Virus record (IMG/VR): IMGVR_UViG_3300023257_000007
Location: 284,223-348,222 of that record
Length of the DNA stretch: 64,000 nt
Reading direction: 5' to 3' (one strand)
The first letter of the stretch is position 1. Every line of letters begins with the position of its first letter. This document shows positions 6,676 to 55,762 of the stretch, in pieces. Under the pieces are notes generated by a model that saw only the letters and a list, made by a program, of their open reading frames with translations, had not been told where the DNA came from and made no database searches. A program made the position numbers and the translations under genes.

Positions 6676-6870
6676 TTAGTAAAGTCCCATTTTATTTGCA
6701 TTATAAAGGTCTGGATTTTCTTTTTTCCACCATTCCCAATAACCATCTAAATTATTATAAGGTAATTGGTTTGTATCACAATATAATGCTTTTAATCCTT
6801 TAGGCAATTCTGGCAACACATTAAATTTATTGTTAATACAATTTAAATCTCGTAAATATTCTAATATCTT
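6676..6870 (-). pseudogene. 3' remnant of an LRR gene (last repeats, cap and tail)
   Basis: Frame reads ...LPELPKGLKALYCDTNQLPYNNLDGYWEWWKKENPDLYNANKMGLY*, near-identical to the end of 47218..47877; in-frame stops upstream and no ATG start. Confidence 0.75.
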
Positions 6871-14142: not shown

Positions 14143-14223
14143 TGTTTAACCCTTTCCAATTTTCTTTTTCTTTGCAATCTTTTATAAATCTTTCTAACTC
14201 ATTTATTGAATCGCATCAATCAT

Positions 14224-20989: not shown

Positions 20990-22186
20990 TTAATTTGAAC
21001 CAATAGTTATTAATTCTGGATGAACAGCACACCCTCTATCCCATTTAAATTCTGGGACTACTTTTTTTAATATATTATATGATGCGTTTAAATCAGCATT
21101 TATTAATATGTTTTCTTTACTTTTAAACATACCCCTTGAAACCCTTTTACCACAATATTCTTTATGTTTTTTTAATTCTTCACCATCAATAAAAGAACAT
21201 TTACTTGTGAAACTTTCTTCATTTAATTTAACATTCAAACCTTCTTTTAATGCTTTATATTCAATCATTTGAATTAATTTATAAAAAGGTATTTGAACAA
21301 AATTTTGATTATTCTTCTTACCCATATTTACATTTTGTTTCCAACTTTTATTATAACCAATAATTATTGTATTTAAATCATTTTTTAAACAAAAATCAAC
21401 CAAATATTTAGATGCATTATGTAAGTAATTATTTATTTTATTATTTCTTTTTTCAGTTAATAAATATAACCTTTTACTTATAAAAGTTTTCTTTGGTAAT
21501 TTTGATTGTAATTTAGACAACTTTTTATTATAATATTGATTAATTGATTTTAATGGTCTACCGTTAATGATTATAGGTTTTACAACCTTTTCATTTGAAG
21601 TTATAGCCATTAAATTATTTACACCTAAATCAACACTACAATATTTACTATTGTCTAACTTTAAAGGTTTTTCATCATATTTATATACTATATTTATTTT
21701 ATATTTTTTTGTTTTAAGTGGTTTTACCTGAACCTCAATTATTTTTTTACTTTTATTTTGAAATGGTAATTTAATACCTGTTTTATATAATTCTATATAA
21801 CCTTCCTTTTCAAGATTTTTAGTTTTTACAGCATTATCCACCAAAATGGCTGTAAATTTACTATTTTTAGGTAAATATTTAGGTAAATTTGGTTTACCAG
21901 TAAATCTATTTGGATTCTTTTTCCATTCTTTCATAGCGTTAAAAAAACTTTTCCAATTTGCATTAAGTATTCTTAGTGTTGGTCTAGCAATTCTAGATAA
22001 TAAATCTTTATATTCTACGTGATCTTTCATAATGGTATACATATCATATACTGTAATATAATTACCATGATTAATAAATTCCTGTCTGATAATGTAGTTA
22101 GCTTTATTGTAAAGATTTTTGGTTTTAACACAAATATCGTTTAAATTATTGTTATTTTTAATTATATGTGATTCAATTAAATACAA
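20990..22186 (-). mobile_element. tnpB: TnpB RNA-guided endonuclease (IS200/IS605-type, no TnpA nearby)
   Basis: RuvC I SVDLGVNN, EESFTSKCS, RuvC III INADLNASYNI; N-terminal KNLYN.ANY..RQ. Confidence 0.9.
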
Positions 22187-26641: not shown

Positions 26642-27145
26642 TTATTCATATTCTTCTATTGCCTCCTCAACTGTTCTTACATCAAAATATTTATTTAGGA
26701 AATCAACGAATTTCTTTCTATCATCTTCATTTCCAAACCAACAATCATGACATTCTTTTTCATAATCATAGAGTTCAATACAAAATGGCCCACTACCATA
26801 TTTTTTAAAGTATCTAATATTCTTTAAATTTATAGTATGCCCATTTTCCCCCTTCTCATTTAATTTAATCCAATAATCTTGTTCATTTAACGACATATCT
26901 TACATTTTAGGGTAAATAAATTCTTTTCTAACTTTAGTCTCTATAGTTACATAATTATCAGACAATTCAACAATTCTACCATCCATTCCATCTGAAAGTT
27001 GATTAAATTTAACATCATCACCTTTTCTCATACATTTTCTATATTTTCGAGCAATTCTCTCTTTTTTAACTGATTTTATAATTCTATAAAATATATAACC
27101 TATAATACAAATTATACCTATTGCAAATAATATTTTTATTGTCAT
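26642..27145 (-). other. two small hypothetical genes (26642-26896; 26900-27145, single-TM, YajC-like layout)
   Basis: ORF track; the second has a TM helix followed by KGDDV...GRIVEL..VTIE. Confidence 0.6.
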
Positions 27146-27300
27146 AATAATCCTAAATCTTTTCCATTAAGATAATCAGCTAATCTTTCTTTTAATATAT
27201 CGGCCAATTCATCTTCTGTTAATATTTCTCTTAATTTACTCATGATAATATCGTAATTTAATGGTTCATCAATACTACAAAAATCTTCATCATTACTCAT
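27142..27300 (-). CDS. 52-aa protein with GL-type tail (not in ORF track)
   Basis: MSNDEDF...YLNGKDLGLL*. Confidence 0.65.
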   Translation of the reverse strand: MSNDEDFCSIDEPLNYDIIMSKLREILTEDELADILKERLADYLNGKDLGLL

Positions 27301-35194: not shown

Positions 35195-35947
35195 TCATAT
35201 TTTAAAAGATTTAAAATCCAGTATTCTAGATTCTGTTCTCATTAAAAGATCAATATGTTCTTTGTCTTTTATATCTTGTTTTGATTGTTTTTGTTTCCTA
35301 ACACGATCACGATTACCAACCATTTTTATTTTTTCTAATTGATCTTCTGTAATGTAAAAATTATGACCATGTATTTGTAATAAAGTTTTATCTTCTTCTA
35401 AACTAATATCAATAAGTAAATACATCTTGAATATTGAATCAATAAAAGCTATAGAATAAAAATATATATATTTGAAAGAAGCATACGAGGTATCATGTTT
35501 CCCTTTACAATACTCTACAGCAAAATCGAATGTTCCATCTCTTTTCCAGTAAGTTAATATTCCATTCAAAGTGTCATTTATATATGTTTCTTTTAAAAAA
35601 ATATTTCCATTTTTTCGAAAACTCATAAATGAACCATTTGCCATATTATTTATATAATGCCCAACTGATAAAACTTTTCCATTTTTTTTATACCAAGTAA
35701 ATTCTCCATCTTTTATTTCTGGGTTAATAGAAATATACGAACCAACCATTTGTAATTGTTCATTAATATAATAATCTCTAACTATAAAATGTGTGTTAAG
35801 TTTTTCAATAATCCTGTAATATTTCGCATTATTATGACAAACTTTATCCCAATCTTTATTAAAATATATAGTATCCTGACTTACTTGTCCTTTAGAATGC
35901 TTGTTAATAAAAATAAAACTCAATATGATTAATATGTATATCTTCAT
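35195..35947 (-). CDS. MORN-variant (YwqK-like) repeat protein with signal peptide, possibly chimeric C-terminus
   Basis: DTIYFNKDW...YYR...GEFTWYKKNG...G.Y.N...NG repeats. Confidence 0.7.
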   Translation of the reverse strand: MKIYILIILSFIFINKHSKGQVSQDTIYFNKDWDKVCHNNAKYYRIIEKLNTHFIVRDYYINEQLQMVGSYISINPEIKDGEFTWYKKNGKVLSVGHYINNMANGSFMSFRKNGNIFLKETYINDTLNGILTYWKRDGTFDFAVEYCKGKHDTSYASFKYIYFYSIAFIDSIFKMYLLIDISLEEDKTLLQIHGHNFYITEDQLEKIKMVGNRDRVRKQKQSKQDIKDKEHIDLLMRTESRILDFKSFKI

Positions 35948-36000
35948 TTAATAATAACTAATATCAGTTTCTATTATTTTCTTAACTTTTACTTATTTTT

Positions 36001-36145
36001 CACCACTGCCGAATCCTTTCGTGTGGTATATTTAATATCTTTTTGTTTTTATTTTTATTTCTTTTTTCATTCAATATTTATTTTTAAAACATAAATCATT
36101 CCTCCTCTTTCCTCACCACACGAAAGGATTCGTGCGGTAGCGGGG
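36001..36145. repeat. inverted pair of REP-like hairpins
   Basis: 18-bp perfect inverted repeat cgaatcctttcgtgtggt (36010-36027) / accacacgaaaggattcg (36115-36132); each copy is internally palindromic. Confidence 0.7.
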
Positions 36146-36187
36146 TCAACTCCAAAACATTTAGTAATTGTATCAGTTTAAATGCCT

Positions 36188-39100
36188 CTAATTTTTAATT
36201 ATTTTTTTTGTAAATATGTTATCTCCTGAAGTTAATACAATCATATACATTGCAGGAGGCAATTTTGATAAATCTATTGATGATATTTCTGCATTTTGAT
36301 ACTCATATTCCATTATTATTTGTCCATAATGATTGAATAGTTCTACATTTATTTTGTCTGTTTTATCAAAGTTTTCAAGATATATATAAATAATATCTCT
36401 AAATGGGTTAGGATAAATCACAACAGATTGATTTGCCGTTGTTTGATTACAAGAAGCCTGAATAAAATTGTAAGTTTTCGAAGTTCCGTCATAATCAACT
36501 TGAGTGAGTCTGTAATAGTTAATCCCGTCTGAGAAATTTGGATCTTTGAAGATGTAGTTTAATAAATTATTAGAATTTCCATTACCATCAATTTTTCCAA
36601 TCTGATCAAAATCCTTTGCGTTTGACGATCTTTCGATAGTGAAATAATCGTTATTTATTTCGCTAGCAGTTGTCCACTGAATATCTATGTTTCCATTATT
36701 GCAATCGGCTTCAAATTTCACAAGATTAACAGGCAAAGGATTTTCGTTACTCTTTGATCCGAAAGTAATTATTTTATTTGACTTTGCTCCAAAAGTAACA
36801 GGAAAACGAGATCTTATAAAGCCTGCATCGTGTGTAAAGCTTGTCAATAGAGGATCACTGTTGAAATCAATATTTGCCCACATAGAACCATTCCAATAGG
36901 CTACAAGTAAATCACTGGCAACAAAATCACCTGAAATCCCATCGTCAAAACCATGAACACAGATGGCGTCGTCAACATGAGTATTGTCGAACCAATATAG
37001 AGTTACAGGCATATCTTGGTCAGAATTAACTACCCAATTTTCTCTATTGCTGACATGATGCAAATTAAGGTCCATATTTCCGCCATGTTCCCACCAATCT
37101 GGCATGTAGGTATTTGAGAAATTATACTGAGCAGTAACAGTAACAGTTGATGCTCCTGTTGGATGTATTCCTAATGCTCCTGCAATGGCATATTCTACAG
37201 ATCCGTTGCCATCAAAATCTTGGATGCTAACATCACCTGTTGGGAAAATAAATTCATTTATCCCAGTTTTAGTAATCATTCCATCAACAAAACTATTGTT
37301 TGAAGAAACATTTGCTGTTGCTGAATTTATAAATGTAAGTGAACCTCCACCAGAATAATAAACAATACCATGGGTAAATGTTGCAGTTCCTTCTATTGTC
37401 ATAGGTGAAGTTATTTCAATATCAGCATGATTACCAAACGAGTTATCAAATAATATATTATTAAAATTACCTACACCTGCATTAATAGTCTGTAATCCAC
37501 TACCGTTAAATGCAACTGTTCCATTTCCGGCATTAAATGTTCCAGAGTTATTCCAATCACCTGTTACTTCTAATGATGACAATCCGCCCAAAGTCAATCC
37601 TGTGCCGATATTCATATCTTCGCAATAAACTGTGGAACTTGCTGTAGTTACAGCATTTGTAGTTGCACAAGTTCCAGCGTCGTAAGATTGAATAAATACA
37701 TTGCTGGTTGCAGAAGGTAATAGAGTTGCAACAGAGTATAGTGTGCCGTTATAATATAACCAGTTTGTAACATCGTCCCAACTATTACCGTTTGCTCCAG
37801 TCCAAAAGTAGTCGCCAGTGCCAATACCACCAGGTGTAGGTGCTGTTGTAACTGTTACTACCCAGCTTCCACCTGCCACTTCGAAACCTGTGTTACAAGT
37901 TCCATCATGTGCCCAACGTCTATAAGTTGTAGTTACTGTTAATCCTCCAGGAGGGTTGTAACTTGCAGAAGTCGCACCAGAAATATCTACTCCGTTAGCT
38001 TGCCATTTATATGTGATAGTATTATCACCACCGCTTGCTACAGCAGTAGAGCTAATATTTGCAGGATCTGTTCCCTGACAGATTGTTTCGCCTGTAGATA
38101 GAATTGTTCCAGCTGTGAAATCTGGTCGAACTGTAACAGTCCATGTTCCTGTTGCAGTTTCACCAGAACAGTTGTTGTTACTGTTAACCGTCATGGTGAG
38201 GGTAACTGTGTTTCCGGCATCACCTGCTGCTGGAGTGTAAGTTGGTGTTAATGTTGTTGCTCCGGATGTGATTGAACCTGCACCGTCTTCTGTCCAAGCA
38301 ATCGTACCGTTAGAAGCACTTGCTCCACTGACTGTCGCAGTTTCATTAACACAAATGTCCTGCGATCCGCCAGCCGAAGCTGTTGGTAATGGATCAACAT
38401 TCACGGTGTATGTTGCTGTTGCTATTTGAGGTGTACAAGCATTATCACTTGTTACAGTCATTGTAAGAGTAATTGTTCCACTGGCATCACCAGCAGCTGG
38501 AGTGTAAGTTGGTGTTAATGTTGTTGCTCCCGATGTGATAGAACCTGCACCGTTTTCTGTCCAAGCAATCGTACCGTTAGAAGCACTTGCTCCACTGACT
38601 GTCGCAGTTTCATTAACACAAATGTCCTGCGATCCGCCAGCCGAAGCTGTTGGTAATGGATCGACATTCACGGCTACATTATCACTTACTCCGCAACCAC
38701 TGGCTGTGGCTGTCATGGTGTAAGTTGTTGTTGATGATGGAGTTGCTACTGGATTTAAAATATTTGGATTACTTAAACCAGTAGTAGGAGACCAAGAGCA
38801 GGTTGGTTGTGCTTGTACGTTATAATGAACGATTCCATTAAACGCTCTAGGTGAACATACACTTGAAAATTGACCACATAATCCAATACCAGCTGTTAAT
38901 GTTAAATAAGAATCTGAATATGTTGTGTTTGCTGTAAGGGTAGTATATTTAGCATTGAAGTTAACATATATACCATAAGTCTGATTTGCCGGTATTATAA
39001 GATTGGCAATATCAAGATAATATTGAGTGCTTGTAACACCATTAATAGAATATGTCCCTAAAAGAATCCAAGAACCACTTGTTGTTTCACTACCTACATA

Positions 39101-41023
39101 GCTTCCCGATTTATAATATACATTAACGGTTTGGGTAGCAGTACTACCAGGTAAAATTGTAAATGCATCAATTTCAATAGGATTTGCACCAGTTGTTAAA
39201 TCAAACATATTTCCTCCACCACATCCATTACCTGCTGCAAAAGTAGTTGTTAAACTACAACTAACAGTACTAAGATTAGCACTTCCACTCAATTGCGAAC
39301 TCGACCCATTACAAATTGTCACATCACTTCCGGCCGAAACTCCTGTTGGTAAAGGATTTACTGTAACTGCCACACTTGCAGCAGCACTCCATGCTCCATC
39401 GCCGGTTCGGTACGATCTAATGTAATACGTTCCTGATGTTGTTACATTATATGTTGAGCCACTGCTTGTCGTAGATGTTCCACTGGCAGAGGTTTGCCAA
39501 TACCATGTTTCTCCAGAAGGAGGTGTGCCGTTTGCGGTGATTGTTACACTGCCGCAACCTGGAGAGTTTGAAGTTGGTGTGTTTGGGGTAATAGGTAGAA
39601 TAACGGCAACGGCAACAATACAAGTATAATCTTCCGTTTCACCATAAGTAAGTGCAGCACATGGATCGGTAGGCGTAGTAGTTCCATAATAATCTGAACG
39701 TATACGCATTTTGTGTGAACCCAGTGTAGCACCAACCGGAATTGTAAAACTTGTGTTTACGGCCGTAGTATTAGAAGGATTAACATAAGTAAGAACCTTC
39801 TCACCTGCGGAAAATGTCAGATCATCATTAAAATCAATCCACACAACATGATCCATACCATAACTCTGAGTGGTGAGACTCAAATTAACAACACCTCCTT
39901 GTACCTGCGATACAGAATAGGTGCCACTATAATCGGTATAAGAGGTTGATGAACAACCTGAGGTACTATTAAAGTTGGTCAGCCCACCTGATGTGGTAAC
40001 ATTTGTTATCCACATATAATTGCAAGGATAAGAAGAAACAATCGGGCTGCAGGGTGGAGCTACAGCTTCTATAATCTCTATATCATCAATAGACATATCG
40101 CTTGTGTATGATGTAGATGTAAGCCCTCTAAAACGCAATTGAACACTACTGTTACCAGCATATGTGCTAAGATCTACATTCGCAGTATGCCATGAGTTAC
40201 CTTGGTCGCCACTTAGGCTCCATACGGTATTCCATGTACCACAATTGTCACCGGATGCTTCAAGATACAATGTTCCCATAACTGCACCGTACATATGGTA
40301 TTGAAAGCTCATATCTATTCCCCCCATAGACGAGAAATCGAGACATGGTCCATACATTGTTGCTGTTTTATTGGAATAATTTGGTGTAGATGATTCCGTG
40401 TACATGTAGTAGCTACCTTCTGCTGCTGCGCTTGGTCCGGTACCGCCTGAGCTAGTGCCTCCGGTTTGTCTTGTCCAATCGAAATCATCCCCGGGTCTAT
40501 TCTCCCAATATCCCATTCCTGTTTCAAATCCTTCTGAGTAAGGAAATGTGCTTACTATTGCAGGGCATGAGCAGGGTGGTGCTCCACCACTAGAAACAAA
40601 TGTAATCGTAGTGGTAACGCAACCAGTATTCGTTCCACAAGATGAATTTGTATTCCAATGTGCATAATATGTTCCTGAACTTGTCGCAGTCCATTGTAAA
40701 GGACTGGTTCCGTGAGCAACCACAGCTCCATTATATGAGCCAGATCTGATTGTAACATATCCTCCCGTACTAATTGCACAACTGTATGTAGTTCCTGAAA
40801 CTACACTATTTATTGTACTATACTCTGTTTGAAAACTACATGTGCTAAAAGTTTCACTTCCAGATGTAGGTGCAGTTGCACTTCCATAAGAAGAAGAATT
40901 TGTACATTGAGCTTGCACCTTGTTAATTGTAAATAACATGCTTATTGCCAATAAAAGCACATAAATCCCTTTGATATTCGATAACTTATTCAGCAATACT
41001 GAAAATGTATAATTTTCTTTCAT
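36188..41023 (-). CDS. T9SS cargo adhesin-like protein (MAM, GEVED, Ig-like repeats, type A CTD)
   Basis: Signal peptide; MAM (DFDW...GP..A.EG.YYMY.E...YHMYG); GETEDY; LPV.L..F.A..W.TASE.NND.F.IERS; IYPNPF...L....Y.I...TKKIIK; visibly higher GC than flanks. Confidence 0.9.
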   Translation of the reverse strand: MKENYTFSVLLNKLSNIKGIYVLLLAISMLFTINKVQAQCTNSSSYGSATAPTSGSETFSTCSFQTEYSTINSVVSGTTYSCAISTGGYVTIRSGSYNGAVVAHGTSPLQWTATSSGTYYAHWNTNSSCGTNTGCVTTTITFVSSGGAPPCSCPAIVSTFPYSEGFETGMGYWENRPGDDFDWTRQTGGTSSGGTGPSAAAEGSYYMYTESSTPNYSNKTATMYGPCLDFSSMGGIDMSFQYHMYGAVMGTLYLEASGDNCGTWNTVWSLSGDQGNSWHTANVDLSTYAGNSSVQLRFRGLTSTSYTSDMSIDDIEIIEAVAPPCSPIVSSYPCNYMWITNVTTSGGLTNFNSTSGCSSTSYTDYSGTYSVSQVQGGVVNLSLTTQSYGMDHVVWIDFNDDLTFSAGEKVLTYVNPSNTTAVNTSFTIPVGATLGSHKMRIRSDYYGTTTPTDPCAALTYGETEDYTCIVAVAVILPITPNTPTSNSPGCGSVTITANGTPPSGETWYWQTSASGTSTTSSGSTYNVTTSGTYYIRSYRTGDGAWSAAASVAVTVNPLPTGVSAGSDVTICNGSSSQLSGSANLSTVSCSLTTTFAAGNGCGGGNMFDLTTGANPIEIDAFTILPGSTATQTVNVYYKSGSYVGSETTSGSWILLGTYSINGVTSTQYYLDIANLIIPANQTYGIYVNFNAKYTTLTANTTYSDSYLTLTAGIGLCGQFSSVCSPRAFNGIVHYNVQAQPTCSWSPTTGLSNPNILNPVATPSSTTTYTMTATASGCGVSDNVAVNVDPLPTASAGGSQDICVNETATVSGASASNGTIAWTENGAGSITSGATTLTPTYTPAAGDASGTITLTMTVTSDNACTPQIATATYTVNVDPLPTASAGGSQDICVNETATVSGASASNGTIAWTEDGAGSITSGATTLTPTYTPAAGDAGNTVTLTMTVNSNNNCSGETATGTWTVTVRPDFTAGTILSTGETICQGTDPANISSTAVASGGDNTITYKWQANGVDISGATSASYNPPGGLTVTTTYRRWAHDGTCNTGFEVAGGSWVVTVTTAPTPGGIGTGDYFWTGANGNSWDDVTNWLYYNGTLYSVATLLPSATSNVFIQSYDAGTCATTNAVTTASSTVYCEDMNIGTGLTLGGLSSLEVTGDWNNSGTFNAGNGTVAFNGSGLQTINAGVGNFNNILFDNSFGNHADIEITSPMTIEGTATFTHGIVYYSGGGSLTFINSATANVSSNNSFVDGMITKTGINEFIFPTGDVSIQDFDGNGSVEYAIAGALGIHPTGASTVTVTAQYNFSNTYMPDWWEHGGNMDLNLHHVSNRENWVVNSDQDMPVTLYWFDNTHVDDAICVHGFDDGISGDFVASDLLVAYWNGSMWANIDFNSDPLLTSFTHDAGFIRSRFPVTFGAKSNKIITFGSKSNENPLPVNLVKFEADCNNGNIDIQWTTASEINNDYFTIERSSNAKDFDQIGKIDGNGNSNNLLNYIFKDPNFSDGINYYRLTQVDYDGTSKTYNFIQASCNQTTANQSVVIYPNPFRDIIYIYLENFDKTDKINVELFNHYGQIIMEYEYQNAEISSIDLSKLPPAMYMIVLTSGDNIFTKKIIKN
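38228..38674. repeat. near-identical internal direct repeat, 267-bp period
   Basis: DPLPTASAGGSQDICVNETATVSG...TPAAGDA occurs twice. Confidence 0.85.
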
Positions 41024-41112
41024 AGACTTAAGATTTTTATTAAGGTGGGTTCTAAAAATTCATTTTTTCAAGATAAATCGTAGAACCCATTAACGATTAT
41101 CTTAAATCAATT

Positions 41113-41120
41113 CAAAATTA
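41113..41120 (-). promoter_or_regulatory. Bacteroidota -7 promoter element TAATTTTG upstream of the T9SS gene
   Basis: Matches TAnnTTTG; no clear -33 element. Confidence 0.35.
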
Positions 41121-41292
41121 ATACTTTTTTTCTAAATAATCATAATTCATTATCATTAAAAGCATTTACAGGATTAATCCTGTCGAATTCTGGTATTTTA
41201 TATTTTAAATCAGTATCTCCATATATGTATATTTGATGTACAAAATTGCCTGATTAGAATTTTCTTGATATGTCCTTAAATATTTCACAATT

Positions 41293-42369
41293 TTATATAT
41301 TAAACTCCAAATCCAATTTTTCTAAAATATTTTCATCGTATCTAATTCTTAATAAATCAATACCATTATCATTACAATATTTGGTTTTTATTAAATCATT
41401 CTCTTGCCTATATTTGAGTCCTTCATCGCCATTCCAATATTCAACAGACTTAAAATGTTGAGCACCATCATATTCAACACACATATTTAATAAAGGTAAA
41501 TAAAAATCAAATGGTAAAGGTTTTATATTCCTACAATCATCAAACCTTTTTTGAGATTCATATTCAATATTATTATCTTTTAAATATTTTTCAATCAATA
41601 ACTCCTTCTTACTTAACCTACATTTTGGACAACCATTACCTGTTAAATGTTCATAAGGAACTTGTTCAAAAATACCATGAGTAGAACATGTTATTTTAAC
41701 TTTTGTATTAGCATTTTTATAATCAACTAAAGAATAATTATACCTTAAATCATGTTTTTTATTAGCCTTTTCTATAAACTCTTCAGTCGTAAATCGTACA
41801 TTATTAGCACATTTAGGACAACCAGTTTTTTTATTAATATGGTTATCAGGTGTTTGTTCAAAAACTCCATGTTCTTCACAAATAATTTTAATCTTTGTTG
41901 TAGTATTCTTATATTCAACTAAAGAATAATCATATTTATCTCCATGTATATCAATGGCTTTTTCTATAAATTCTTCTGTCGTTAATTTTTTATTACCAGA
42001 ACAACTAGGACAACCTCTTCCAAATAAATGTGATTTTGGAATTTGTTCAAAAACACCATGTTCTTTACAAATAATTTTAACTTTTGTAATATTATTTTTA
42101 TAATCAACTAAAGAATAATCATATCTATTGCCATGTGTTTTAATAGATTTTTCTATGAAATCTGTAGACCTTTTAGAATCTATACCACATTTAATACAAT
42201 TTTTACCACTTAAATGACTACTTGGTTTTTGTTCAAAAACACCATGAACTTTACAAATAATTTTAATTTTTTTATTCGCACCAATATAATTAACTAAAGA
42301 ATAATCGTACCTATCTCCGTACAATTTCTTGGCTTTTTCTATAAATTTTTCTGTCGTTAATTTTCTCAT
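41293..42369 (-). CDS. homing-type endonuclease: four Zn-binding repeats plus PD-(D/E)XK/Vsr-like domain
   Basis: Repeated YDYSLV.Y...KIIC..HG.FEQ.P..H..G..C..C; FDFYLP...VEYDG.QHF. Confidence 0.85.
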   Translation of the reverse strand: MRKLTTEKFIEKAKKLYGDRYDYSLVNYIGANKKIKIICKVHGVFEQKPSSHLSGKNCIKCGIDSKRSTDFIEKSIKTHGNRYDYSLVDYKNNITKVKIICKEHGVFEQIPKSHLFGRGCPSCSGNKKLTTEEFIEKAIDIHGDKYDYSLVEYKNTTTKIKIICEEHGVFEQTPDNHINKKTGCPKCANNVRFTTEEFIEKANKKHDLRYNYSLVDYKNANTKVKITCSTHGIFEQVPYEHLTGNGCPKCRLSKKELLIEKYLKDNNIEYESQKRFDDCRNIKPLPFDFYLPLLNMCVEYDGAQHFKSVEYWNGDEGLKYRQENDLIKTKYCNDNGIDLLRIRYDENILEKLDLEFNI

Positions 42370-42428: not shown

Positions 42429-43865
42429 TTACATCTTATCAATCAATATACGCTTTCCAAATGTTAAATTACTAGGATCATCATTATGGGAAACAATCCA
42501 AATTACTCTATTGCTGAAAGTACTGTAGCGTCTTCTGTCAGGACAATCCCCAAGAGCATCTGTAAAATATATCATAAATGCTGGTTGCAGTCCCTTCTTT
42601 ACCAAGTTATCCTGAATCCAGTCAAACGGGGGAGTAAATCTTGTTCCACCGAAACCTTGAGGTCTTAATTTATCAATTTTAAATTTATTTCTTGTACTAA
42701 ATTCTTGTACACCACAAATATCATAATCACACCATATAACATGACATTTTTTAATACCTCTATTCTTAAAAATAGCATGTATTTCAGATGCAAACTTATC
42801 TAAATCATCTTCACTAATAGATCCAGATGTATCAATAGCAATAACAACGTTATTGTAATCTGATTTTTTCTTATTTAATCCCCATAAATAATCACCTCTA
42901 CTAATAGCACGTCTCTGTGGTAGTTTATGTTTTAATTTACTATAAATATTAGCAACAAATTTTCTTAATTCTGCTTGCCAATTTACTTTAGGTTTTGAGA
43001 TTTTTCTTAAAAATCTCTGCATATTAGCACTACCGAAACCTTGATTCTTAGATGAAGCATCTCTTACGATTTCACCCCATACTTGTTTCATTTTTTCATC
43101 ATTTCCTTTAGCGCCTTGTAATTCTTTGTTTCCTGATTGTCCAGCAGTTCCACCACCTTGTCCAGGTTTTCCTTTTCCTTTTCCTTTTCCTTGTCCGTTT
43201 CCTTCGCCTTCGCCTTCTCCTTCACATTCTCCTTCACATTCTCCATCATCATAAATATCAATACCACCACTTAATGAACCAGGGGCTTGAATATCAGAAC
43301 CAAGACCATCCATAAGTTGTTTAATAAGTTCTTTCTTTTTTTGTTTGTTTTTTTCCCATTCTGGTTCTAATTCAGCATAAATTTGTTCAGTACTCCAATC
43401 TTTATATTTTTCTTCATAAAGAACTTTCTCTGGCATTTTACCAATACCTTCTAATAATAGGTTAATAGCATAATCACCTGAAATATTCCATAATTCAGGA
43501 TCTCTGCCTAAACCTCTATCAAAATGGAATAATGCATTATGCATAATTTCATGACATAGAACAAATACACATTCTTCTTCACTTAATTCATTAGCAAAGT
43601 CACTATTATACATGATTGATAAACCATCAGTTGCCATAGTTGTAATTCTAGGGTCTGTGGCTTGTTTAATTTTAAGATTAAATAATAAATCAGCAAAGAA
43701 ACCGTAGTTTGCTACGATAACCATAATACATTTTCTTATCTTTTTCCAAGCTCTATCATCTAATTTTTTCTTCTTATCATCTGATTTTTTTTGCTTATCT
43801 TCTTCTTTATCTTCTTTTCCTTCAACAATAGAAGCAAATTTGCAATATCGTTCTAATTTTCCCAT
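42429..43865 (-). CDS. metallopeptidase-like plus VWA domain protein (DUF2201-like)
   Basis: TMATDG, HEIMH, D.AIN, Gly-rich linker, MIDAS DTSGS, GGT.F, FTD. Confidence 0.88.
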   Translation of the reverse strand: MGKLERYCKFASIVEGKEDKEEDKQKKSDDKKKKLDDRAWKKIRKCIMVIVANYGFFADLLFNLKIKQATDPRITTMATDGLSIMYNSDFANELSEEECVFVLCHEIMHNALFHFDRGLGRDPELWNISGDYAINLLLEGIGKMPEKVLYEEKYKDWSTEQIYAELEPEWEKNKQKKKELIKQLMDGLGSDIQAPGSLSGGIDIYDDGECEGECEGEGEGEGNGQGKGKGKGKPGQGGGTAGQSGNKELQGAKGNDEKMKQVWGEIVRDASSKNQGFGSANMQRFLRKISKPKVNWQAELRKFVANIYSKLKHKLPQRRAISRGDYLWGLNKKKSDYNNVVIAIDTSGSISEDDLDKFASEIHAIFKNRGIKKCHVIWCDYDICGVQEFSTRNKFKIDKLRPQGFGGTRFTPPFDWIQDNLVKKGLQPAFMIYFTDALGDCPDRRRYSTFSNRVIWIVSHNDDPSNLTFGKRILIDKM

Positions 43866-43930
43866 ATTTTTAGTTTTATTTTCTTAAAGATATATATTAT
43901 TTTTTAAAATTAAAAATGTTCAAAATAATA

Positions 43931-44230
43931 TTATTTAGTTACTTTATCTACTAATTTATTTTTTTCTTCTTGATTTAAGTTAGCAAGAATTTCATCATAT
44001 TCATCACTCCACATCTTAATAATTTTCATCATCAATTCATTACCATCTTTTTCAAATGAATTTAAAGATTTTAATATTTTTTTAATTTCTTTAGTTGAAC
44101 CAACAAAATCATTATTTTGAAATATATCAATAACTTTATCTTTTATAATTTCTTCTTTTGAATAAAGACCCATATCAGAAAATGTTTTTTCCTGTTGTGT
44201 GAATTCTTCAAATAATTTTACTTTTTTCAT
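43931..44230 (-). CDS. hypothetical protein with leader
   Basis: Starts MKKVKLFEEF. Confidence 0.7.
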   Translation of the reverse strand: MKKVKLFEEFTQQEKTFSDMGLYSKEEIIKDKVIDIFQNNDFVGSTKEIKKILKSLNSFEKDGNELMMKIIKMWSDEYDEILANLNQEEKNKLVDKVTK

Positions 44231-44240
44231 AATTTATATA

Positions 44241-44269
44241 AAAAAAGCCTGTTTAACAGGCTTTTTTTT
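44241..44269. terminator. intrinsic terminator hairpin
   Basis: aaaaaagcctgtttaacaggctttttttt. Confidence 0.7.
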
Positions 44270-44291
44270 AAATATCTAATTTTTACTTCTA

Positions 44292-45806
44292 TTATGGATT
44301 TAAAATGTCAGCAAATTTGTTATACCATTTCTTAATTGAAGGTACCCAAATTTTCTTCCAAGGATCATCAGTTGTTACATAAGCATGTGTCTTTTTAACA
44401 TATTGTAGTAACGATGTTGCAACTTCCATATTCTCAATTCTTCTTGCATATGTAATTAAATTTTCAAGTTCCTTTGCAGTTAATTTCTCACCTTTTTTAG
44501 CCATACCAATAGCAGCAGTTACCGCTCTAGATCTATCGATTCTTTTTGGTGGCATAGGAGCTTCTTCTGGTTTCTTGTATACAAGAGCAATATCTTTTGG
44601 TGGAAATACTGCCAATAAATCAAGATATTCTGCAAACTGAACAGCTGCAGTATTACCAACATGAGAATTAAATAACTTTTTAATTGCTTCTTTAGATAAC
44701 TGATTTCCTGATGCTTCTTTAGCTTCTGTATATTCTAATGATGCACTTGCCCAAGAACGTGGAGATGGCCAGTTAGGAGTTTCTTTATCAGGATCTAAAT
44801 GATGAAGTATGTCTTTATTGAAATCAATATAACCAATTACGTCAGGATCCATATAATCTTGTTTAATAGCCCATGTCACCCATTCATCTTTTGTTGTAAT
44901 AAGATTATAGTGAGTAAAACGGTTAGCTAGAGCAGTACCTAAATCAGTTACTGTTGGTTCTTCTTCACGTCTATTACCAGCAGCAATAATTAACCATTTA
45001 TCAGGTAATTTATATTCACCAACTTGACCATCAAGACATAGTTGAAGTGAAGCTGATAATACATGCTCATTAGCACGGTTCAATTCATCAAAAAACATAA
45101 TACCACCTTTTCCATTTTCACCATTATCACTAGGGAAAATCTTAGGTAATCTAAATGTCGTTCTTCTTGAAGTGTCTCCTTCAACTTTTACACCAGCAGC
45201 ATCTTTAGTATCTCTACCTTTAACAACTTCAATTTCTGGAAGGCCAATAAAATCAGTAGGCTCAATTGTTGCTAAATGCCATACTAAACAATCAACTTGA
45301 AGTTCTTTGGCTGTTGCATTAATAACATCTGTTTTACCAATACCTGGAGCACCCCAAATAAATGTAGAAAACATTTTATTTGGATATTTTGTCTTCATTT
45401 TAAACTTACGAACAAGAATATTACTCATTTCTGAAGGAACATAATTACCTACTTCTGGATTAGGATGCTCTAAAGGCACCTTATCCTCGTTCATAGCTAA
45501 TTTTGCATCTTCAATTGATAATTCTTCTGTTTCTTCTTCTTCAGAAAGATTATCAATTTCTTTTTCTATTCCTGATATTTTACTTTCATCTGGTTTACTA
45601 CCATATGGAAAAATATCTACTTTACCTTCTAATGCGCCTTTCTTCTTCAAGAAGAGAGCATAATATAACCAAGCAGCTTTTTTAAATTTCTTTTCAAAGA
45701 AATCCCATACTTTGTCGACCATACCACTTATCCAATTTTCGTTAAGTTCGCTATCGTACATGTGCTTTTCGTTTAAAAAGTTCTTGTAATTTACTAATTT
45801 TTTCAT
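44292..45806 (-). CDS. MoxR/dynein-related AAA+ ATPase with leader
   Basis: GAPGIGKT, FFDELNRA, AAGNR, ALANRF, PSPRSW; starts MKKLVNYKNFLNE. Confidence 0.9.
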   Translation of the reverse strand: MKKLVNYKNFLNEKHMYDSELNENWISGMVDKVWDFFEKKFKKAAWLYYALFLKKKGALEGKVDIFPYGSKPDESKISGIEKEIDNLSEEEETEELSIEDAKLAMNEDKVPLEHPNPEVGNYVPSEMSNILVRKFKMKTKYPNKMFSTFIWGAPGIGKTDVINATAKELQVDCLVWHLATIEPTDFIGLPEIEVVKGRDTKDAAGVKVEGDTSRRTTFRLPKIFPSDNGENGKGGIMFFDELNRANEHVLSASLQLCLDGQVGEYKLPDKWLIIAAGNRREEEPTVTDLGTALANRFTHYNLITTKDEWVTWAIKQDYMDPDVIGYIDFNKDILHHLDPDKETPNWPSPRSWASASLEYTEAKEASGNQLSKEAIKKLFNSHVGNTAAVQFAEYLDLLAVFPPKDIALVYKKPEEAPMPPKRIDRSRAVTAAIGMAKKGEKLTAKELENLITYARRIENMEVATSLLQYVKKTHAYVTTDDPWKKIWVPSIKKWYNKFADILNP

Positions 45807-49933: not shown

Positions 49934-50832
49934 ATGAAAATATTACAACGTAAATTTGTAACGAGATTAATAGGAGTTCCTAATTGGAAATATTATGGTT
50001 ATGAATATTGGGATGTTGTTCCTGATATTCATAAACAAACTTTAGAAATTGAACATAATACAAGAAGTGGTAAATTCAGAATTTATATTGACAGAGATGA
50101 AATTGAAGTAATAAAATACGAAGAAGAATTAGAAGCTATCATAAAAGCTTATAGAAAATATTTAAATGATGATAAAATTAGATAAAGATTATGTGATAAT
50201 TTGGGGTGCAAGAACTCATAATGGTTATGTGTATCGTAAAGAAGAATTTCCAGTTGATATTGAGAAAGAATTTTATGTCATGTCTGAATATTCTAATGAT
50301 TTTAAATTAAAAAATATATGTGCAATGACAAATGTATGTATTGATAATATTGGTTTTTATGTAGAAAATTTCAGATTTATAGATACACAAATAGGCAAAA
50401 TATGTAAAAAACTTGGTGGTTTAGGTATAAAACAATATATTCATACACAATCTATGGGTTCACATTATAGTGATACAACAACGGTTCACAAATTAATTGG
50501 TTTTTATATATCACCGGTTTCAATGTATGATAATTTACCAGCTAAAATAATAAAGAAACAAAGAAAATTAAAATTAAATAGAATTAAAAATGCATAAAAT
50601 TGGAAATTTTTTTAGAATTATATTAAATATTAAAGTAGAATATCACTTTGAGTTTTTTATTTATTTAGATGAACAAACAGGAGAAATCGTAGAAGATGAA
50701 ATAACTGGACATATTAAATGGATGGATAAATTCTCAATAAGATCAACTACTAGAAACAAAGCTCAAAAATTAGCTTGGTGTAAAGTAAATGCAAAGTTTC
50801 CTGATTTAGTAAATAAATTGTGGATGTTTTAA
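49934..50832 (+). other. three hypothetical genes (49934-50185, 50166-50597 with RK tail, 50590-50832)
   Basis: Overlapping ORFs; 50166 ends KKQRKLKLNRIKNA. Confidence 0.7.
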
Positions 50833-51388
50833 ATCAATCCCATGTTACTTCCTTGAAAAAACCAATGTGGATCTGACATTATTTTATCTAAATCTAATTG
50901 TATCATATAATGATGCAAATCTTCTTCTTCATATAATTTAATACAAGTAAATTCATCAAGAATTTCTAATAGTTTATTAAGATCAACATCACAATCTACA
51001 CGTACTATACCACTTACAGTAGAATATATATTGGGTATTTCATCTTTATCATATATTTCAACACCAATTTTTGTAAATTCTTGTCTTAGATATAAGACAA
51101 ATTGAGATATTCTTTCAACATATTCTTCGTTTCCTGTATCATTTGCTACAGCAGTCCATTTTTGTAGATTTTCATATATTTTCAAATATTTCATTTTGAA
51201 CCTTCTAATTCTTTAAGACTTATTAAAAAAATATCATCTTTTAATAAATAATCAATATCTTCTACACTATAATATTCATCTTCAATATAAATAGTCATCC
51301 CCTGAGCAGGTACAAAATTTAAACTTACAGATATATCATTTATATCATCATCTATATAAGTTTTTAAATCAAAAATAATTGCAAACAT
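50829..51388 (-). other. two hypothetical genes (50829-51194 with leader and tail; 51191-51388)
   Basis: MKYLKIYEN...GSNMGLI. Confidence 0.7.
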
Positions 51389-51444
51389 AATTTTAAGTTT
51401 ATTTATATTATATATTTATTTTAATATATAGCTTTATAATATAT

Positions 51445-53317
51445 TTGAAATCATATAAAACCTTTGAATGGAGAGAATCTGAAGTGGTTTGTTTACCAAT
51501 TGAAGTATTTAGTGAATATTCAAATTCTATGGGCCAATCACAAAAAATAAATATTGATGTTCAAGAATATTTAAAATCAAAAGGATTAAAAACACTTTCA
51601 GGTAATGACATGGTAGTCAGTTCTTTTACAAATTTTATTGTTATTATATTTGAATCTAAAAGAACATATTATACTTTTTATGATACTATTGAAGGTATTA
51701 AAGGAGTTTACAACAATCCAGAAATATTAGATACAGTAACATCTAATGAATTATTAAATGGCGATTTAGATTATATGTTTGATGCAAATAAATTAGGATT
51801 ATTATGAAATATTTAAAAACATATGAAAATCTTATAGAACCAGATTATGATAATATTGATTTTATAAAAGTAATGGACCAAAATAATAATCAAATTAATG
51901 GTTTAACATATAAATTTAAAGCTACACGTTCACGTTTAAAAAAAATATCCAGCTTTTACGACCATGATGAATCACTAAAATTAAAAATATTACTAAAAGA
52001 AATGAAAATGAAAATACATAAATTATTTTTAACTAACATAAAACTAAAAGAAGAATATTATAAAAGAAACCCAGATATTAAAGCTGGTGAAGATTTAGGA
52101 TTATTATGAAACATTTAAAAACATATGAAGGGTTTAGTAAACCTAAAATGGTAGAAAAACCAGAACAAATTTATTTCACAAACATCAAAGCCAATGATAT
52201 TTTTGAAGCATGGAAAATTCTTGAAAAACATTTCAATATACCAAAAGTTGATAGTTCTCTTAATATTGATTCAAATCTTTTTCTAAAATCAATTAAAAAT
52301 AAACAATATAAAGAAATGTATATTCGACACATGGAAGAACATGGTAAACATTTTACAACTAAAGCTATTGTATATGATAAACATAACAATACACCCTTTA
52401 CAGTTGTTAATATAAATGACGTTAATTTTGGATATGAAAATTTTAATTTTTATGATTGGGCTGAAGAGAACGGTTATAGTTATATTCTTCAAGGAAATGA
52501 TCTAGGATTATTATGAAAAACAATTCAATATGAAATACTTAAAAACAAAAAAAATATTCGAAAACCAATCCAAAGAAATATCTGCACTTTTAAATGATAT
52601 CAATGTTAATAATATTAAAGGTATTCAAGAATATATTGATAAAGGTTATGATTTAGATTATAAAGATGAAGATGGTGATTTTGCTTTAATATATGCTACT
52701 TTAAATTATATAATAAATATTAGTGATGGTCCAAATAATTCTAAAGGTGAATTTTCAACAATAGAATTTTTAATTGACGCTGGTGCTAATTGGAATATTA
52801 AAGATAACGATAATAAAACATTTTGTGATTATTTAGAAGATAAAGATAAAGAAAAACTAAAAGATAAATATCCTGATAAATATGGACAATATATATCAAG
52901 TAAATTAGGACTATTATAATGATATATTTAAAAACATATAAAGAATCCAAAGAGGATTTTGATACTTTTAAACGAATTGAAGTTTGGAGTAAACTTAGAC
53001 CTTATTACAATAAATATGGTTCATTTGAATTAAATGTTAATATTACATTTAAGTTTGGTTTTGAAGAAGATGAAGTAAAAGATTACATATTTACTAGAAA
53101 CATAAAGAAAATAAAATATACATCACTAGATTATATTGAATTACATTCAACATTGACAGTTATAGATAAAGATGGTGGTACAAGAAGTGAAGAACAAGTA
53201 AGAAATTTTAGAAGTTGTGATAATAAATCTTTAAACGAAGTATTTAAATATATTAAAAATATATCAAATGAAGACATCATTTCATATATAGAATCAAATA
53301 GAATGGGCTTATTATAA
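51445..53317 (+). other. array of five leader- and tail-bearing genes (51445, 51804, 52106, 52530, 52919)
   Basis: All end [K/D/R][L/M]GLL; junctions of the form ggattattatgaaa.atttaaaaacatatgaa. Confidence 0.85.
52530..52919 (+). CDS. ankyrin repeat protein with leader and tail
   Basis: G.DLDYKDEDGDFALIYA...FLIDAGANWNIKDND. Confidence 0.75.
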   Translation: MKYLKTKKIFENQSKEISALLNDINVNNIKGIQEYIDKGYDLDYKDEDGDFALIYATLNYIINISDGPNNSKGEFSTIEFLIDAGANWNIKDNDNKTFCDYLEDKDKEKLKDKYPDKYGQYISSKLGLL

Positions 53318-54765: not shown

Positions 54766-55762
54766 TATAATAAATCCATCTTTTTACTTTCAATCCATTG
54801 TTTCATTTCTTTACTGAAAAAATATTTATATAAAGGAATCAATTGTTTCGTTCTTTTTAATTTATCTAAATTTTCTTTTTTTAAAATATTATCTCTTTCA
54901 AATATACCAGACTTTCTTACAGTAAAAATATTGTCATTATTATTATACATTGATACCTCACAAATATGTATCCAAGGCCAATTATTTACAATCTGAACTT
55001 GACGAATACCATCACCCCAATCTACATATTGATCAAATATAATATTACTACCAATATATTTTCTCATAGAAATAATTAATTCAGACATTTCATCAAACAT
55101 CTTTTGTTCAATATCATCTAATTTCTCTTTTTGTTTAATATAATCTTCGTAAGTTTTCATTAAATCAATCCCATTTTATTACCATCAAATATATAAGAAT
55201 ATTTCTTTTTTATATCAGATCGAACTTTCAATTCTCTAAATCTTTCAGGATTTTTTATAAGAAATTCATCTTGAAATAAATAAGTGTTAATGATGTGTCT
55301 ATATATATTATCATTTGAAAAATCTATATCATCAATATTTTTATTAAAATATAAAAACAATTTAATATAAAGATTAGCATATACTCTAGACGTATAAGCA
55401 ATAGATAATATTTCTTGTAAAATATTAGTTTTGCTAAAATCAAAACCTAATTCAATTAAATATTCAAACATATCAATAAAACCTTTTTGATCTTTTATGA
55501 TGTCATCATTTGTTCTGTATATTGTATGTTTTATTATTGGTAATTTGTCAATTTGTGCATCTTTTCCAAACTCATCATATATTCTCTTAGCTAATTTTTT
55601 AGATTCTTCCCAGTTTTCATTTTTATATTCACCTTTATTAGTATAATTATAATATCTAGGATTTAATAAACTTGAGAATTTTCCTTTCAAAAATTGAGGA
55701 TGGTCTTCATATTCTGAAAGTTTAGTAAATTCTAATTCTTCATATGTTTTTAGGTATTTCAT
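54765..55762 (-). other. two leader- and tail-bearing genes (54765-55160, 55160-55762)
   Basis: MKTYEDYI...SKKMDLL; MKYLKTYEE...GNKMGLI. Confidence 0.8.

What the first reader, a model, noticed from the sequence alone, without database searches (positions are those of the whole stretch)
35195..41290. Host-like island with an intact 1611-aa T9SS substrate inside a phage genome
Seen: a GC-richer gene with signal peptide, MAM, GEVED, Ig-like repeats and a T9SS CTD; a neighbouring MORN-variant gene; an intergenic REP-like inverted pair; and a TAnnTTTG element. At the right edge are a leader-only stub (41205-41288, MKYLRTYQEN...) and a perfect 16-bp palindrome (41168-41183). At the left edge the MORN gene changes to a phage-like C-terminus. 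Established: T9SS is essentially restricted to Bacteroidota and relatives. Inference: recent capture of chromosomal DNA into a phage gene. It points to the host and could let the phage remodel the host surface through the host secretion system.
Basis: partly seen in the sequence, partly recalled or inferred. Interest (0 to 1): 0.62.

Follow-up and report, generated by a model that had tools for sequence, protein, structure and literature searches.

The report
Host T9SS gene captured by phage
A 5.7-kb piece of a Bacteroidota chromosome, carrying an intact giant cell-surface protein gene with a type IX secretion tag, was very recently pasted into a huge salt-lake phage; the donor locus, the uninterrupted phage site and the filled site are all recoverable from public metagenomes, which names the phage's host lineage but leaves any function for the phage untested.

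Summary
Window 35421-41146 (5,726 bp) is bacterial DNA inside a huge phage: the window is the last 88 kb of a 348-kb IMG/VR record. Three states were recovered.
(1) Filled site: the exact gene with the same neighbours is on 6 contigs, and an independent run bridges the right junction.
(2) Empty site: two independent contigs join 41147 to 35420 with only 3 nt between.
(3) Donor: Bacteroidia chromosomal contigs (MiaB, FtsY, L33, L28 nearby) are 100% identical to window 36271-35419. They continue into a full-length 324-aa gene that the phage holds only as its first 175 codons.
The island's other end is the last 103 bp of an IS5-like element. So both ends are truncated bacterial features, and the direction was bacterium to phage, by illegitimate recombination (0-2 nt microhomology, 3 bp lost).
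The 1611-aa gene (MAM, GEVED, Ig-like, type-A T9SS CTD) is intact. Its synonymous codon usage matches the donor, not the phage. Most of its excess GC is amino-acid composition.
TAnnTTTG is at chance level. The palindrome and the 'stub' are phage DNA outside the island.
Phage-encoded T9SS cargo has been reported before, so this is a new member of a known kind. Function for the phage is untested.

The parts
35421..41146 (-). The captured bacterial island (5,726 bp). It replaces 3 nt (GTA on the + strand) of the phage.
   Evidence: Empty-site contigs L081 and L082 join 41147 to 35420 with 3 nt between. The same joint is in a contig of run X6. Bacterial contigs are 100% identical up to 35419.
41044..41146 (-). 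Terminal 103 bp of an IS5-like insertion sequence, truncated at the island's edge. It contains the only upstream TAnnTTTG (41113-41120).
   Evidence: L084 713-820 and L083 5552-5656 equal window 41040-41147 at 100% and lie next to a 362-aa DDE_Tnp_1 + DUF772 transposase. Depth is several-fold higher, with many alternative outer flanks, in run X5. Only this fragment is present in the 348-kb phage.
41024..41043 (-). The 20 bp of native bacterial sequence just upstream of the start codon. They are shared with the IS-free bacterial allele L014.
   Evidence: Homology between L014 and the window starts at 41043. A loose end at 41043 in run X6 equals L014's upstream sequence.
36188..41023 (-). Intact 1611-aa T9SS type-A cargo gene (P0001): signal peptide, MAM, GEVED, Ig-like repeats, an all-beta region, and the C-terminal sorting domain.
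   Evidence: Bacterial alleles are 97.6-99.7% identical. GC3 matches the donor.
38143..38674 (-). Tandem duplication of a 267-bp (89-aa) Ig-like module. Bacterial allele L014 and an X6 contig have a single copy.
   Evidence: and 34 (joint 38287->38555 skips 267).
35948..36187 (-). Bacterial intergenic region holding the REP-like inverted pair (arms 36010-36027 and 36115-36132).
   Evidence: The pair occurs only here in the 348-kb phage and is at the same locus in all four bacterial contigs. Depth is raised, with loose ends at 36115/36145, in X5.
35421..35947 (-). First 175 codons (signal peptide plus MORN-like repeats) of a bacterial 324-aa gene, cut off by the capture.
   Evidence: P0124 is 100% identical over residues 1-176. 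Nucleotide identity to L077-L080 is 100% and ends at 35419.
35195..35420 (-). Phage-derived last 75 codons, now fused in frame to the truncated bacterial gene (the 250-aa chimeric ORF P0002).
   Evidence: Only the last 42 codons are called as a gene (P0132) in the empty-site contigs.
41147..41292 (-). Phage intergenic DNA on the other side of the insertion. It holds the terminator-like palindrome 41168-41183, the 27-codon 'stub' 41205-41288, and the start of the 111-codon open frame that ran through the site.
   Evidence: Unchanged in L081/L082. Hairpin scan. Frame analysis.
41293..42369 (-). Phage gene P0003, homing/HNH-endonuclease-like (DUF723/DUF4379 zinc-finger repeats plus a nuclease-like C-terminus), 146 bp from the insertion site.
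   Evidence: The family is scattered over many jumbo-phage and giant-virus contigs.

Best explanation
SHOWN. A huge phage picked up 5,726 bp of a Bacteroidia chromosome. The phage has 25% GC, and the window is part of a 348-kb IMG/VR record that CheckV rates about half complete. The donor has 28-30% GC and lives in the same salt-lake system.

SHOWN. The captured block is one contiguous stretch of that chromosome:
- the last 103 bp of an IS5-like element;
- 20 bp of native upstream sequence;
- a complete 1611-aa T9SS type-A cargo gene;
- an intergenic region with a REP-like inverted pair;
- the first 527 bp of the next gene.

SHOWN. The block replaced 3 bp of the phage, 146 bp downstream of a homing-endonuclease-like gene. 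There is at most 2 nt of microhomology, no target-site duplication, and no integrase or complete transposase.

INFERRED. The mechanism was illegitimate (end-joining type) recombination during an infection, so the donor lineage is a host of this phage.

INFERRED. The event is very recent: the flanks are 100% identical and the donor's codon usage has not been ameliorated.

INFERRED. The cargo gene is intact and keeps its signal peptide and sorting domain. If transcribed in an infected cell, its product would cross the inner membrane by Sec. The host's T9SS would then export it and attach it to the cell surface as an adhesin-like, non-enzymatic protein. Transcription could come from the IS end, from read-through of phage transcription, or from both.

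MY JUDGEMENT. It is at present more likely a tolerated passenger (about 0.6-0.7) than a selected phage function (about 0.3).
For: FILLED SITE IS REAL.
- G000 and the 348-kb G001 are identical over 88,016 bp.
- The exact protein is on 6 contigs of 50-348 kb with the same neighbours, among them an ENA assembly.
- A contig of run X4 (39430-41237) bridges the right junction with no mismatch. A contig of run X1 (35400-38258) bridges the left junction; X1 may be the window's own source sample.

EMPTY SITE. L081 (JGI 3300031601) and L082 (ENA ERZ27316756) match window 44102-41147 at 99.1-99.2%, then carry 3 nt, then match 35420-34603 at 100%. Run X6 shows the same joint.

DONOR.
- L077-L080 are 100% identical to window 36271/36145-35419.
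- They continue into the full-length 324-aa gene and then MiaB-like, FtsY, DUF4295, L33 and L28 genes.
- L014 carries a 98.5-99.7% identical allele behind a CHU_C/SprB gene.
- Run X5 holds the gene but no phage flank: depth is 0 at 41171-41350.

IS END..

CODON USAGE. GC3 is 0.235 in the gene, 0.216 in donor genes and about 0.145 in phage genes (z = 13).

JUNCTIONS..

PHAGE IDENTITY. Terminase, helicase, topoisomerase II, RNR and 25 tRNAs.

DOMAINS.. No enzyme domain or fold was found.
Against: - No bacterial contig shows the IS end and the cargo gene joined. The donor arrangement on the right side is inferred from the IS's identity and from the IS-free allele breaking at exactly the same base.
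- Logan contigs, not raw reads, were laid, so per-read coverage steps were not examined.
- No RNA data exist, so expression is unknown.
- The host inference assumes capture happened during infection of the donor lineage.
- The donor could not be named below class level: its FtsY is at most 79% identical to 400 sampled Bacteroidia genomes.
- Whether the insertion interrupted a real phage gene is open. The 111-codon frame has no canonical start and no family.
Confidence: 0.9

Rival explanations
1. Assembly chimera: a bacterial contig and a phage contig were wrongly joined by the assembler.
For: The gene contains internal repeats at which unitigs break (38143-38674), and short multi-copy elements sit near both ends. 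Such places can mislead assemblers.
Against: The same junctions appear, with no mismatch, in IMG/VR, ENA and Logan assemblies of different samples. The exact protein is on 6 long contigs with the same neighbours. The breakpoints are single-base precise and complementary to an independently assembled empty site. Both island ends fall inside bacterial features, not at repeat boundaries shared with the phage.
Confidence: 0.02
2. Opposite direction: the block is native to the phage and was transferred to the bacterium, or the bacterial contigs are prophage remnants.
For: Sequence identity alone is symmetric. An integrase gene lies about 5 kb from the locus in the bacterial contig L077.
Against: In the bacterium the MORN-like gene is complete (324 aa) and the IS is complete with its transposase. 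In the phage both are cut off exactly at the island's ends. Bacterial flanks are housekeeping genes with no phage homology. The gene's codon usage fits the bacterium, not the phage. A phage variant lacking the block exists. A run holds the gene without the phage (X5).
Confidence: 0.02
3. The captured gene is a selected phage function (a moron). The phage makes infected cells display an extra adhesin through the host T9SS, for example to mask a surface receptor against superinfection or to change attachment of infected cells.
For: The 4.8-kb ORF is intact, with signal peptide and CTD. The filled variant was assembled from several lake samples. Variable T9SS-tagged genes have been reported in another phage and interpreted this way (PMC7468147). 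Weak CTD-region matches occur in four other uncultured huge phages.
Against: The transfer is so recent (100% identical flanks) that an intact ORF says nothing about selection. The block carries obvious debris: a truncated IS and a truncated neighbour gene fused to phage sequence. That is what an accident looks like. It is the only Por_Secre_tail gene in the 348 kb. There are no expression data.
Confidence: 0.3
4. There is no foreign island: the gene is an old phage gene whose higher GC merely reflects its Thr/Ser/Gly/Ala-rich composition.
For: Codon position 2 carries most of the GC excess (0.52 vs about 0.27), and GC3 is still very low at 0.235.
Against: Synonymous GC3 is twice the phage expectation (z = 13). 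The empty site and the donor locus were both recovered.
Confidence: 0.01

Closest known systems
Phage-encoded T9SS cargo genes of 'Cryophage' (Bellas et al. 2020, Nat Commun, PMC7468147)
   Same: A phage of a Bacteroidota-type host carries genes ending in a type-A T9SS sorting domain. The genes sit in flexible regions that differ between phage variants, and hijacking of the host secretion system has been proposed.
   Different: There the cargo are enzymes or a PA14 protein (endoglucanase, GH39) in a far smaller phage, and no donor or empty site was shown. Here there is one giant adhesin-like gene in a huge phage, with donor locus, empty site and breakpoints all resolved.
Phage morons and host-derived auxiliary genes (e.g. 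lambda bor/lom; established knowledge)
   Same: A self-contained host-type gene inserted between phage genes. It is not needed for the phage life cycle and has a composition differing from the phage's.
   Different: Classical morons are old, ameliorated and have their own promoter and terminator. This block is un-ameliorated and carries truncated bystanders (an IS end and a neighbour gene), so it is at the stage before selection has acted.
Aberrant-excision or illegitimate-recombination capture of host DNA, as in specialised transducing phages (established knowledge)
   Same: Contiguous chromosomal DNA joined to phage DNA at non-homologous breakpoints with 0-2 nt of microhomology and a small loss at the target.
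   Different: There is no evidence that this phage integrates: no attachment site or integrase was found near the island. The block is an insertion within the phage, not a replacement next to an attachment site.
Giant T9SS-secreted surface adhesins of Bacteroidota (SprB/RemA-type and MAM/Ig-repeat CTD proteins)
   Same: Signal peptide, long arrays of Ig-like modules, binding domains (MAM, GEVED), a C-terminal sorting domain, and alleles that differ by gain and loss of repeat modules.
   Different: It has a type-A CTD (PF18962), not the type-B CHU_C of SprB. No function has been tested for this family member. This copy is encoded by a virus.

Membership tests
T9SS type-A cargo protein | C-terminal Por_Secre_tail / TIGR04183 sorting domain at the very end of the protein | tested here: met
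   PF18962 at residues 1536-1609 (47.3 bits, cut-off 27). TIGR04183 at 1536-1611 (44.5 bits, cut-off 23).
T9SS type-A cargo protein | N-terminal Sec signal peptide | tested here: inconclusive
   Read from the sequence only: a basic N-region, a hydrophobic core at residues 20-33, and an Ala-Gln junction at 38/39. No signal-peptide predictor was available.
T9SS type-A cargo protein | The producing cell has a T9SS machinery | not tested
   Indirect only. The donor chromosome encodes the same gene, and a CHU_C/SprB-repeat gene lies next to it. The core genes (porK/L/M/N, sov) could not be sought because no donor genome is held.
Host-to-phage gene capture (moron-type insertion) | A phage variant without the insert (empty site) | tested here: met
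   L081 and L082, from two assemblies, plus the contig joint in run X6.
Host-to-phage gene capture (moron-type insertion) | A donor locus in cellular context, colinear with the insert and extending beyond both of its ends | tested here: met
   Left end: L077-L080 continue into the full gene and housekeeping genes. Right end: the IS continues into its transposase (L083, L084). The IS-to-gene joint itself was not seen on a bacterial contig.
Host-to-phage gene capture (moron-type insertion) | Insert composition fits the donor, not the phage | tested here: met
   GC3 is 0.235 in the gene, 0.216 in donor genes and about 0.145 in phage genes (z = 13).
Transposon or integrase-mediated insertion | Target-site duplication, terminal inverted repeats at both ends, and a recombinase within the insert | tested here: not met
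   3 bp were lost rather than duplicated. Only one truncated IS end is present. The island has no transposase or integrase.
MORN repeat variant (PF07661) protein | Score above the Pfam gathering threshold | tested here: not met
   22.8 bits (P0002) and 23.2 bits (full-length P0124) against a cut-off of 29.6. The repeat pattern is visible by eye, but membership is not established.
REP (repetitive extragenic palindromic) element | Short palindromic unit dispersed in many intergenic copies of the genome | tested here: inconclusive
   Two inverted 18-nt units, each a small hairpin. Depth is raised with several alternative flanks in run X5. No further copy was found in about 40 kb of donor-lineage contigs, and no donor genome is held.
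IS5-family insertion sequence | DDE transposase with DUF772 N-domain; multi-copy with defined ends | tested here: met
   DDE_Tnp_1 at 91 bits and DUF772 at 71 bits. The identical end is seen in at least three contexts, each time beside TTAA. The terminal inverted repeat at the far end was not identified.

The most novel reading that the evidence does not exclude
The phage-borne copy is expressed during infection and routed through the host's own T9SS, so that infected cells display an extra or variant giant adhesin. This would be a virus reprogramming the Bacteroidota cell surface, for superinfection exclusion by receptor masking or for altered attachment. Under this reading, the flexible site next to the homing-endonuclease-like gene serves as a landing pad where such host surface genes are repeatedly sampled.
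Probability: 0.2. Interest if true: 0.65.

Novelty: new member of a known kind. Interest (0 to 1): 0.5.

Why it matters
- It gives a nucleotide-exact host link for an uncultured huge phage. These are usually assigned hosts only by weak signals.
- It is a rare natural snapshot of the first step of moron or auxiliary-gene birth. Donor, empty site, filled site and breakpoints are all known, and amelioration or trimming has not yet begun.
- It therefore offers a dated starting point for following, in a time series of the same lake system, whether a captured host surface gene is kept, trimmed or lost.
- It adds a second, independent case to the single published report of phage-encoded T9SS cargo.

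Tried and rejected
- Close donor in one genome per GTDB species: none found. The best hits were a Bacteroidales MAG at 50% over 190 aa and a Saprospirales MAG.
- The listing of cluster members gave no organism names.
- Junction pattern in IMG/VR: no hit. The empty site was found instead through the 42-aa gene call P0132.
- P0003 as a synteny marker for related phages: useless, because the family is mobile and scattered.
- Function of the unannotated parts of the protein: relaxed Pfam scans gave nothing meaningful. The ESM Atlas gave only 'hypothetical + Por_Secre_tail' clusters. An AlphaFold model of residues 1040-1535 (pLDDT 69) matched only FnIII/Ig-like accessory modules at TM below 0.2.
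- PHROGs: nothing for the cargo gene's N-terminal 480 aa, the chimeric ORF, P0004 or the interrupted 111-codon frame.
- Far-end inverted repeat of the IS: not found.
- No RNA run holds the region, so expression could not be addressed.
- Operators' notes: read laying was given 5,951 letters. No alternative genetic code was used.
Full report
WHAT THE WINDOW IS.
The window is bases 24017-88016 of an 88,478-bp IMG/VR virus record (G000, CheckV 32%). That record is identical, with no mismatch over 88,016 bp, to the last part of a 348,222-bp record, IMGVR_UViG_3300023257_000007 (G001, CheckV 49%, GC 25.2%).
- The window encodes a terminase large-subunit fragment, a helicase, endonucleases and a TnpB-like gene.
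- The larger record adds topoisomerase II, ribonucleotide reductase, a second terminase-like gene, a Lon-like protease and 25 tRNAs.
- Coding density under table 11 is 82-84%.
Calling it a huge phage is reasonable.

THE OBSERVATION.
The ORF at 36188-41023 (-) encodes 1611 aa with MAM (166-319), GEVED (393-468), a sub-threshold Ig_7 and a terminal Por_Secre_tail/TIGR04183 domain. It is the only Por_Secre_tail gene in the 348 kb.

GC rises to about 40% against 25%, but this is mostly codon position 2 (0.52 vs about 0.27), i.e. a Thr/Ser/Gly/Ala-rich protein. GC3 is 0.235 against 0.11-0.19 in other genes. Conditioned on amino-acid content, the gene still has 320 GC-ending codons where the phage's own usage predicts 162 (z = 13). 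No other gene exceeds z = 4. So a foreign synonymous signature is real, though far smaller than the raw GC plot suggests.

The smaller features:
- The inverted pair (36010-36027 / 36115-36132, 18 nt, perfect) and the 16-bp palindrome (41168-41183) are there.
- TAnnTTTG is at chance frequency: 120 found against 129 +/- 10 expected.
- The MORN label rests on about 23 bits against a cut-off of 29.6.

NOT A CHIMERA.
- The exact 1611-aa protein is on 6 contigs (five of 50-200 kb, one of 348 kb) with the same neighbours. One is an ENA assembly that is 100% identical over 24.8 kb.
- Twenty-four coded runs, each filed under its own study code, hold all or part of the region. Twenty-two are salt-lake metagenomes and two are marine.
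- With Logan contigs laid on 35400-41350, a contig of independent run X4 covers 39430-41237 without mismatch and so bridges the right junction.
- A contig of run X1 covers 35400-38258 and so bridges the left junction. X1 may be the window's own source.
- Contigs break only at the gene's internal 267-bp tandem repeat and at an A-rich stretch.

THE DONOR.
A 1883-aa protein (P0005, contig L014) is a 98.5-99.7% identical allele at the nucleotide level. Homology to the window runs from the stop codon to 20 bp upstream of the ATG (41043) and stops there. L014's upstream 777 bp are unrelated to the phage, have 31-37% GC, and end a gene with a CHU_C type-B T9SS domain and a SprB repeat.

On the other side, a search with the 250-aa 'MORN' ORF found P0124, a 324-aa protein that is 100% identical to its first 176 residues. 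P0124 lies on four shown bacterial contigs (L077-L080; the longest is 56 kb, GC 28-30%). There it is followed by a MiaB-like methylthiotransferase, FtsY, DUF4295 and ribosomal proteins L33 and L28.
- These contigs are 100% identical to window 36271-35419, and identity ends at 35419.
- L080 is colinear with the phage arrangement.
- L077-L079 carry an extra insert of about 790 bp with a 144-aa ORF at 36145.
- Donor housekeeping genes have a pooled GC3 of 0.216, matching the cargo gene.
- In run X5 the gene and the bacterial continuation are present, while the phage flank 41171-41350 has zero depth. The gene therefore exists without the phage.

THE EMPTY SITE.
The phage-derived C-terminal 74 aa of the chimeric ORF retrieved a 42-aa gene call (P0132) on two 3.75-kb contigs from different assemblies (L081, JGI 3300031601; L082, ENA ERZ27316756).
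- Both contigs match window 44102-41147 (99.1-99.2%), then have 3 nt, then match 35420-34603 (100%).
- A contig of marine run X6 shows the same joint: 35420 to 41147, skipping 5,726 bp, with GTA between. Its short 'side' of 21 nt is only because my laid stretch began at 35400.
- The island is therefore 35421-41146.
- A deletion of the island could not easily create the 3 extra letters, whereas an insertion with a 3-bp loss explains them. The empty form is therefore taken as ancestral.

THE RIGHT END.
The 103 bp at 41044-41146 are absent from L014 but had several-fold higher depth and many alternative outer flanks in X5. A metagenome scan with the sequence that continues beyond 41147 in X5 found two contigs (L083, L084). 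In both, window 41040/41043-41147 (100%) is the end of an element encoding a 362-aa DDE_Tnp_1 + DUF772 transposase, beside a TTAA.

So in the donor strain an IS5-like element sits 20 bp upstream of the cargo gene, and the capture breakpoint fell 103 bp inside it. The phage holds nothing else of this IS. The one step not directly seen is a bacterial contig joining this IS to the gene. It is inferred because the IS-free allele L014 diverges at exactly the IS end.

DIRECTION AND MECHANISM.
Both island ends cut through bacterial features that are complete in the bacterium: the IS and the 324-aa gene. This fixes the direction as bacterium to phage.

The junctions show at most 2 nt of microhomology ('TT' on the left), a 3-bp loss, no duplication, and no recombinase inside the block. 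This points to illegitimate recombination, presumably in an infected cell, and so makes the donor lineage a host.

The site lies 146 bp behind P0003, whose best PHROG families are homing/HNH/intron-encoded endonucleases and whose relatives are scattered over jumbo phages and giant-virus contigs. A nuclease-made break near its own gene is a plausible trigger, but that is speculation.

CONSEQUENCES IN THE PHAGE.
- The cargo gene is intact.
- The truncated neighbour gene is fused in frame to 75 phage codons, giving the 250-aa chimeric ORF.
- In the empty site, a 111-codon open frame runs through the insertion point. Such a run is expected by chance in well under 1% of cases in 25%-GC DNA (my estimate). 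However, it has no ATG/GTG/TTG before the last 42 codons and no relatives. 'Inserted into a phage gene' therefore stays open.
- The palindrome is a terminator-like hairpin behind P0003. It and the 27-codon 'stub' pre-exist in the empty site.

WHAT THE PROTEIN IS.
It has binding and adhesion modules only. No catalytic Pfam domain appears even at E = 1. Its nearest Atlas clusters are Bacteroidota 'hypothetical + Por_Secre_tail' proteins. A model of residues 1040-1535 (pLDDT 69, all-beta) matches only FnIII/Ig-like accessory modules at TM below 0.2.

Relatives are giant surface proteins of Flavobacteriales, Cytophagales, Chitinophagales and others. Alleles differ by whole modules. The phage allele lacks a 1,064-bp Ig_7/LTD-like segment present in L014, and it has a 267-bp module twice.

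By established knowledge of T9SS type-A cargo, the product would be exported by Sec and T9SS, its CTD would be removed, and it would be anchored to the cell surface.

COMPARISON AND NOVELTY.
- Host-gene capture by phages is well known.
- Phage-encoded T9SS type-A cargo has been described once, in 'Cryophage' (PMC7468147).
- Four uncultured huge-phage records in GenBank show weak matches to the CTD region.
- New here are the cargo type (a 1611-aa adhesin-like protein), the huge-phage setting, and above all the complete resolution of donor, empty site and breakpoints of an event so recent that nothing has been ameliorated or trimmed.
I rate it a new member of a known kind, with interest 0.5.

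LIMITS.
- The donor could be placed only in class Bacteroidia.
- No RNA data were available.
- Contigs, not raw reads, were laid.

Noticed in passing
G001 27139-27213 and 55154-55226 (L019:7139-7213, L020:15154-15226), outside the window: Two of the 25 tRNA genes of the 348-kb phage record have the amber-suppressor anticodon CTA. TAG is the rarest stop among ORFs of at least 100 aa (31 of 402). This could indicate partial TAG recoding, as reported for other huge phages.
   Followed up: no
window 41293-42369 (-): P0003 consists of four DUF723/DUF4379 zinc-finger repeats plus a nuclease-like C-terminus. It matches PHROG homing/HNH/intron-encoded endonuclease families, and its relatives at 35-56% identity are scattered over many jumbo-phage and giant-virus (GVMAG) contigs. 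It looks like a mobile gene, and it sits 146 bp from the insertion site.
   Followed up: partly
window 41147-41253 joined to 35195-35420 (L081:2832-3164): In the empty-site phage, a 111-codon frame stays open with no ATG/GTG/TTG until its last 42 codons. It overlaps the 27-codon GTG-started 'stub' (41205-41288), which is in another frame. It could be a gene with an unusual start, a frameshift, or nothing at all. No relatives were found.
   Followed up: partly
window about 13805-14147 and about 6640-6860; many places in G001 (e.g. 268467-268796, 331561-331851): A family of repeats of about 330 bp (81-85% identical) occurs in over a dozen copies across the 348-kb phage record.
   Followed up: no
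L077:128-917, L078 and L079 (bacterial contigs), corresponding to window 36145: Some donor-lineage strains carry an extra insert of about 790 bp with a 144-aa ORF of no known family, next to the REP-like element. Strain L080 and the phage lack it.
   Followed up: partly
window 39346-39367 and 38143-38674; L014:2473-3536: Alleles of the cargo gene differ by whole modules. A 1,064-bp Ig_7/LTD-like segment is present in bacterial allele P0005 and absent from the phage allele. A 267-bp module is duplicated in the phage allele and single in L014 and in an X6 contig.
   Followed up: partly
window 61752-62651 (+) and G001 50150-52477 (+): Terminase-large-subunit-like sequences occur at two distant places in the phage record (a 299-aa and a 775-aa ORF). 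This may be a split or a duplicated terminase.
   Followed up: no
window 20990-22186 (-): A TnpB/OrfB_IS605 gene with a Cas12f-like TNB domain lies inside the phage.
   Followed up: no
window 42429-45806 (-): A DUF2201 (VWA-like) gene is paired with a MoxR/AAA_5-like ATPase gene just beyond P0003. The DUF2201 gene differs by an 18-24-nt indel between the filled and empty phage variants.
   Followed up: no
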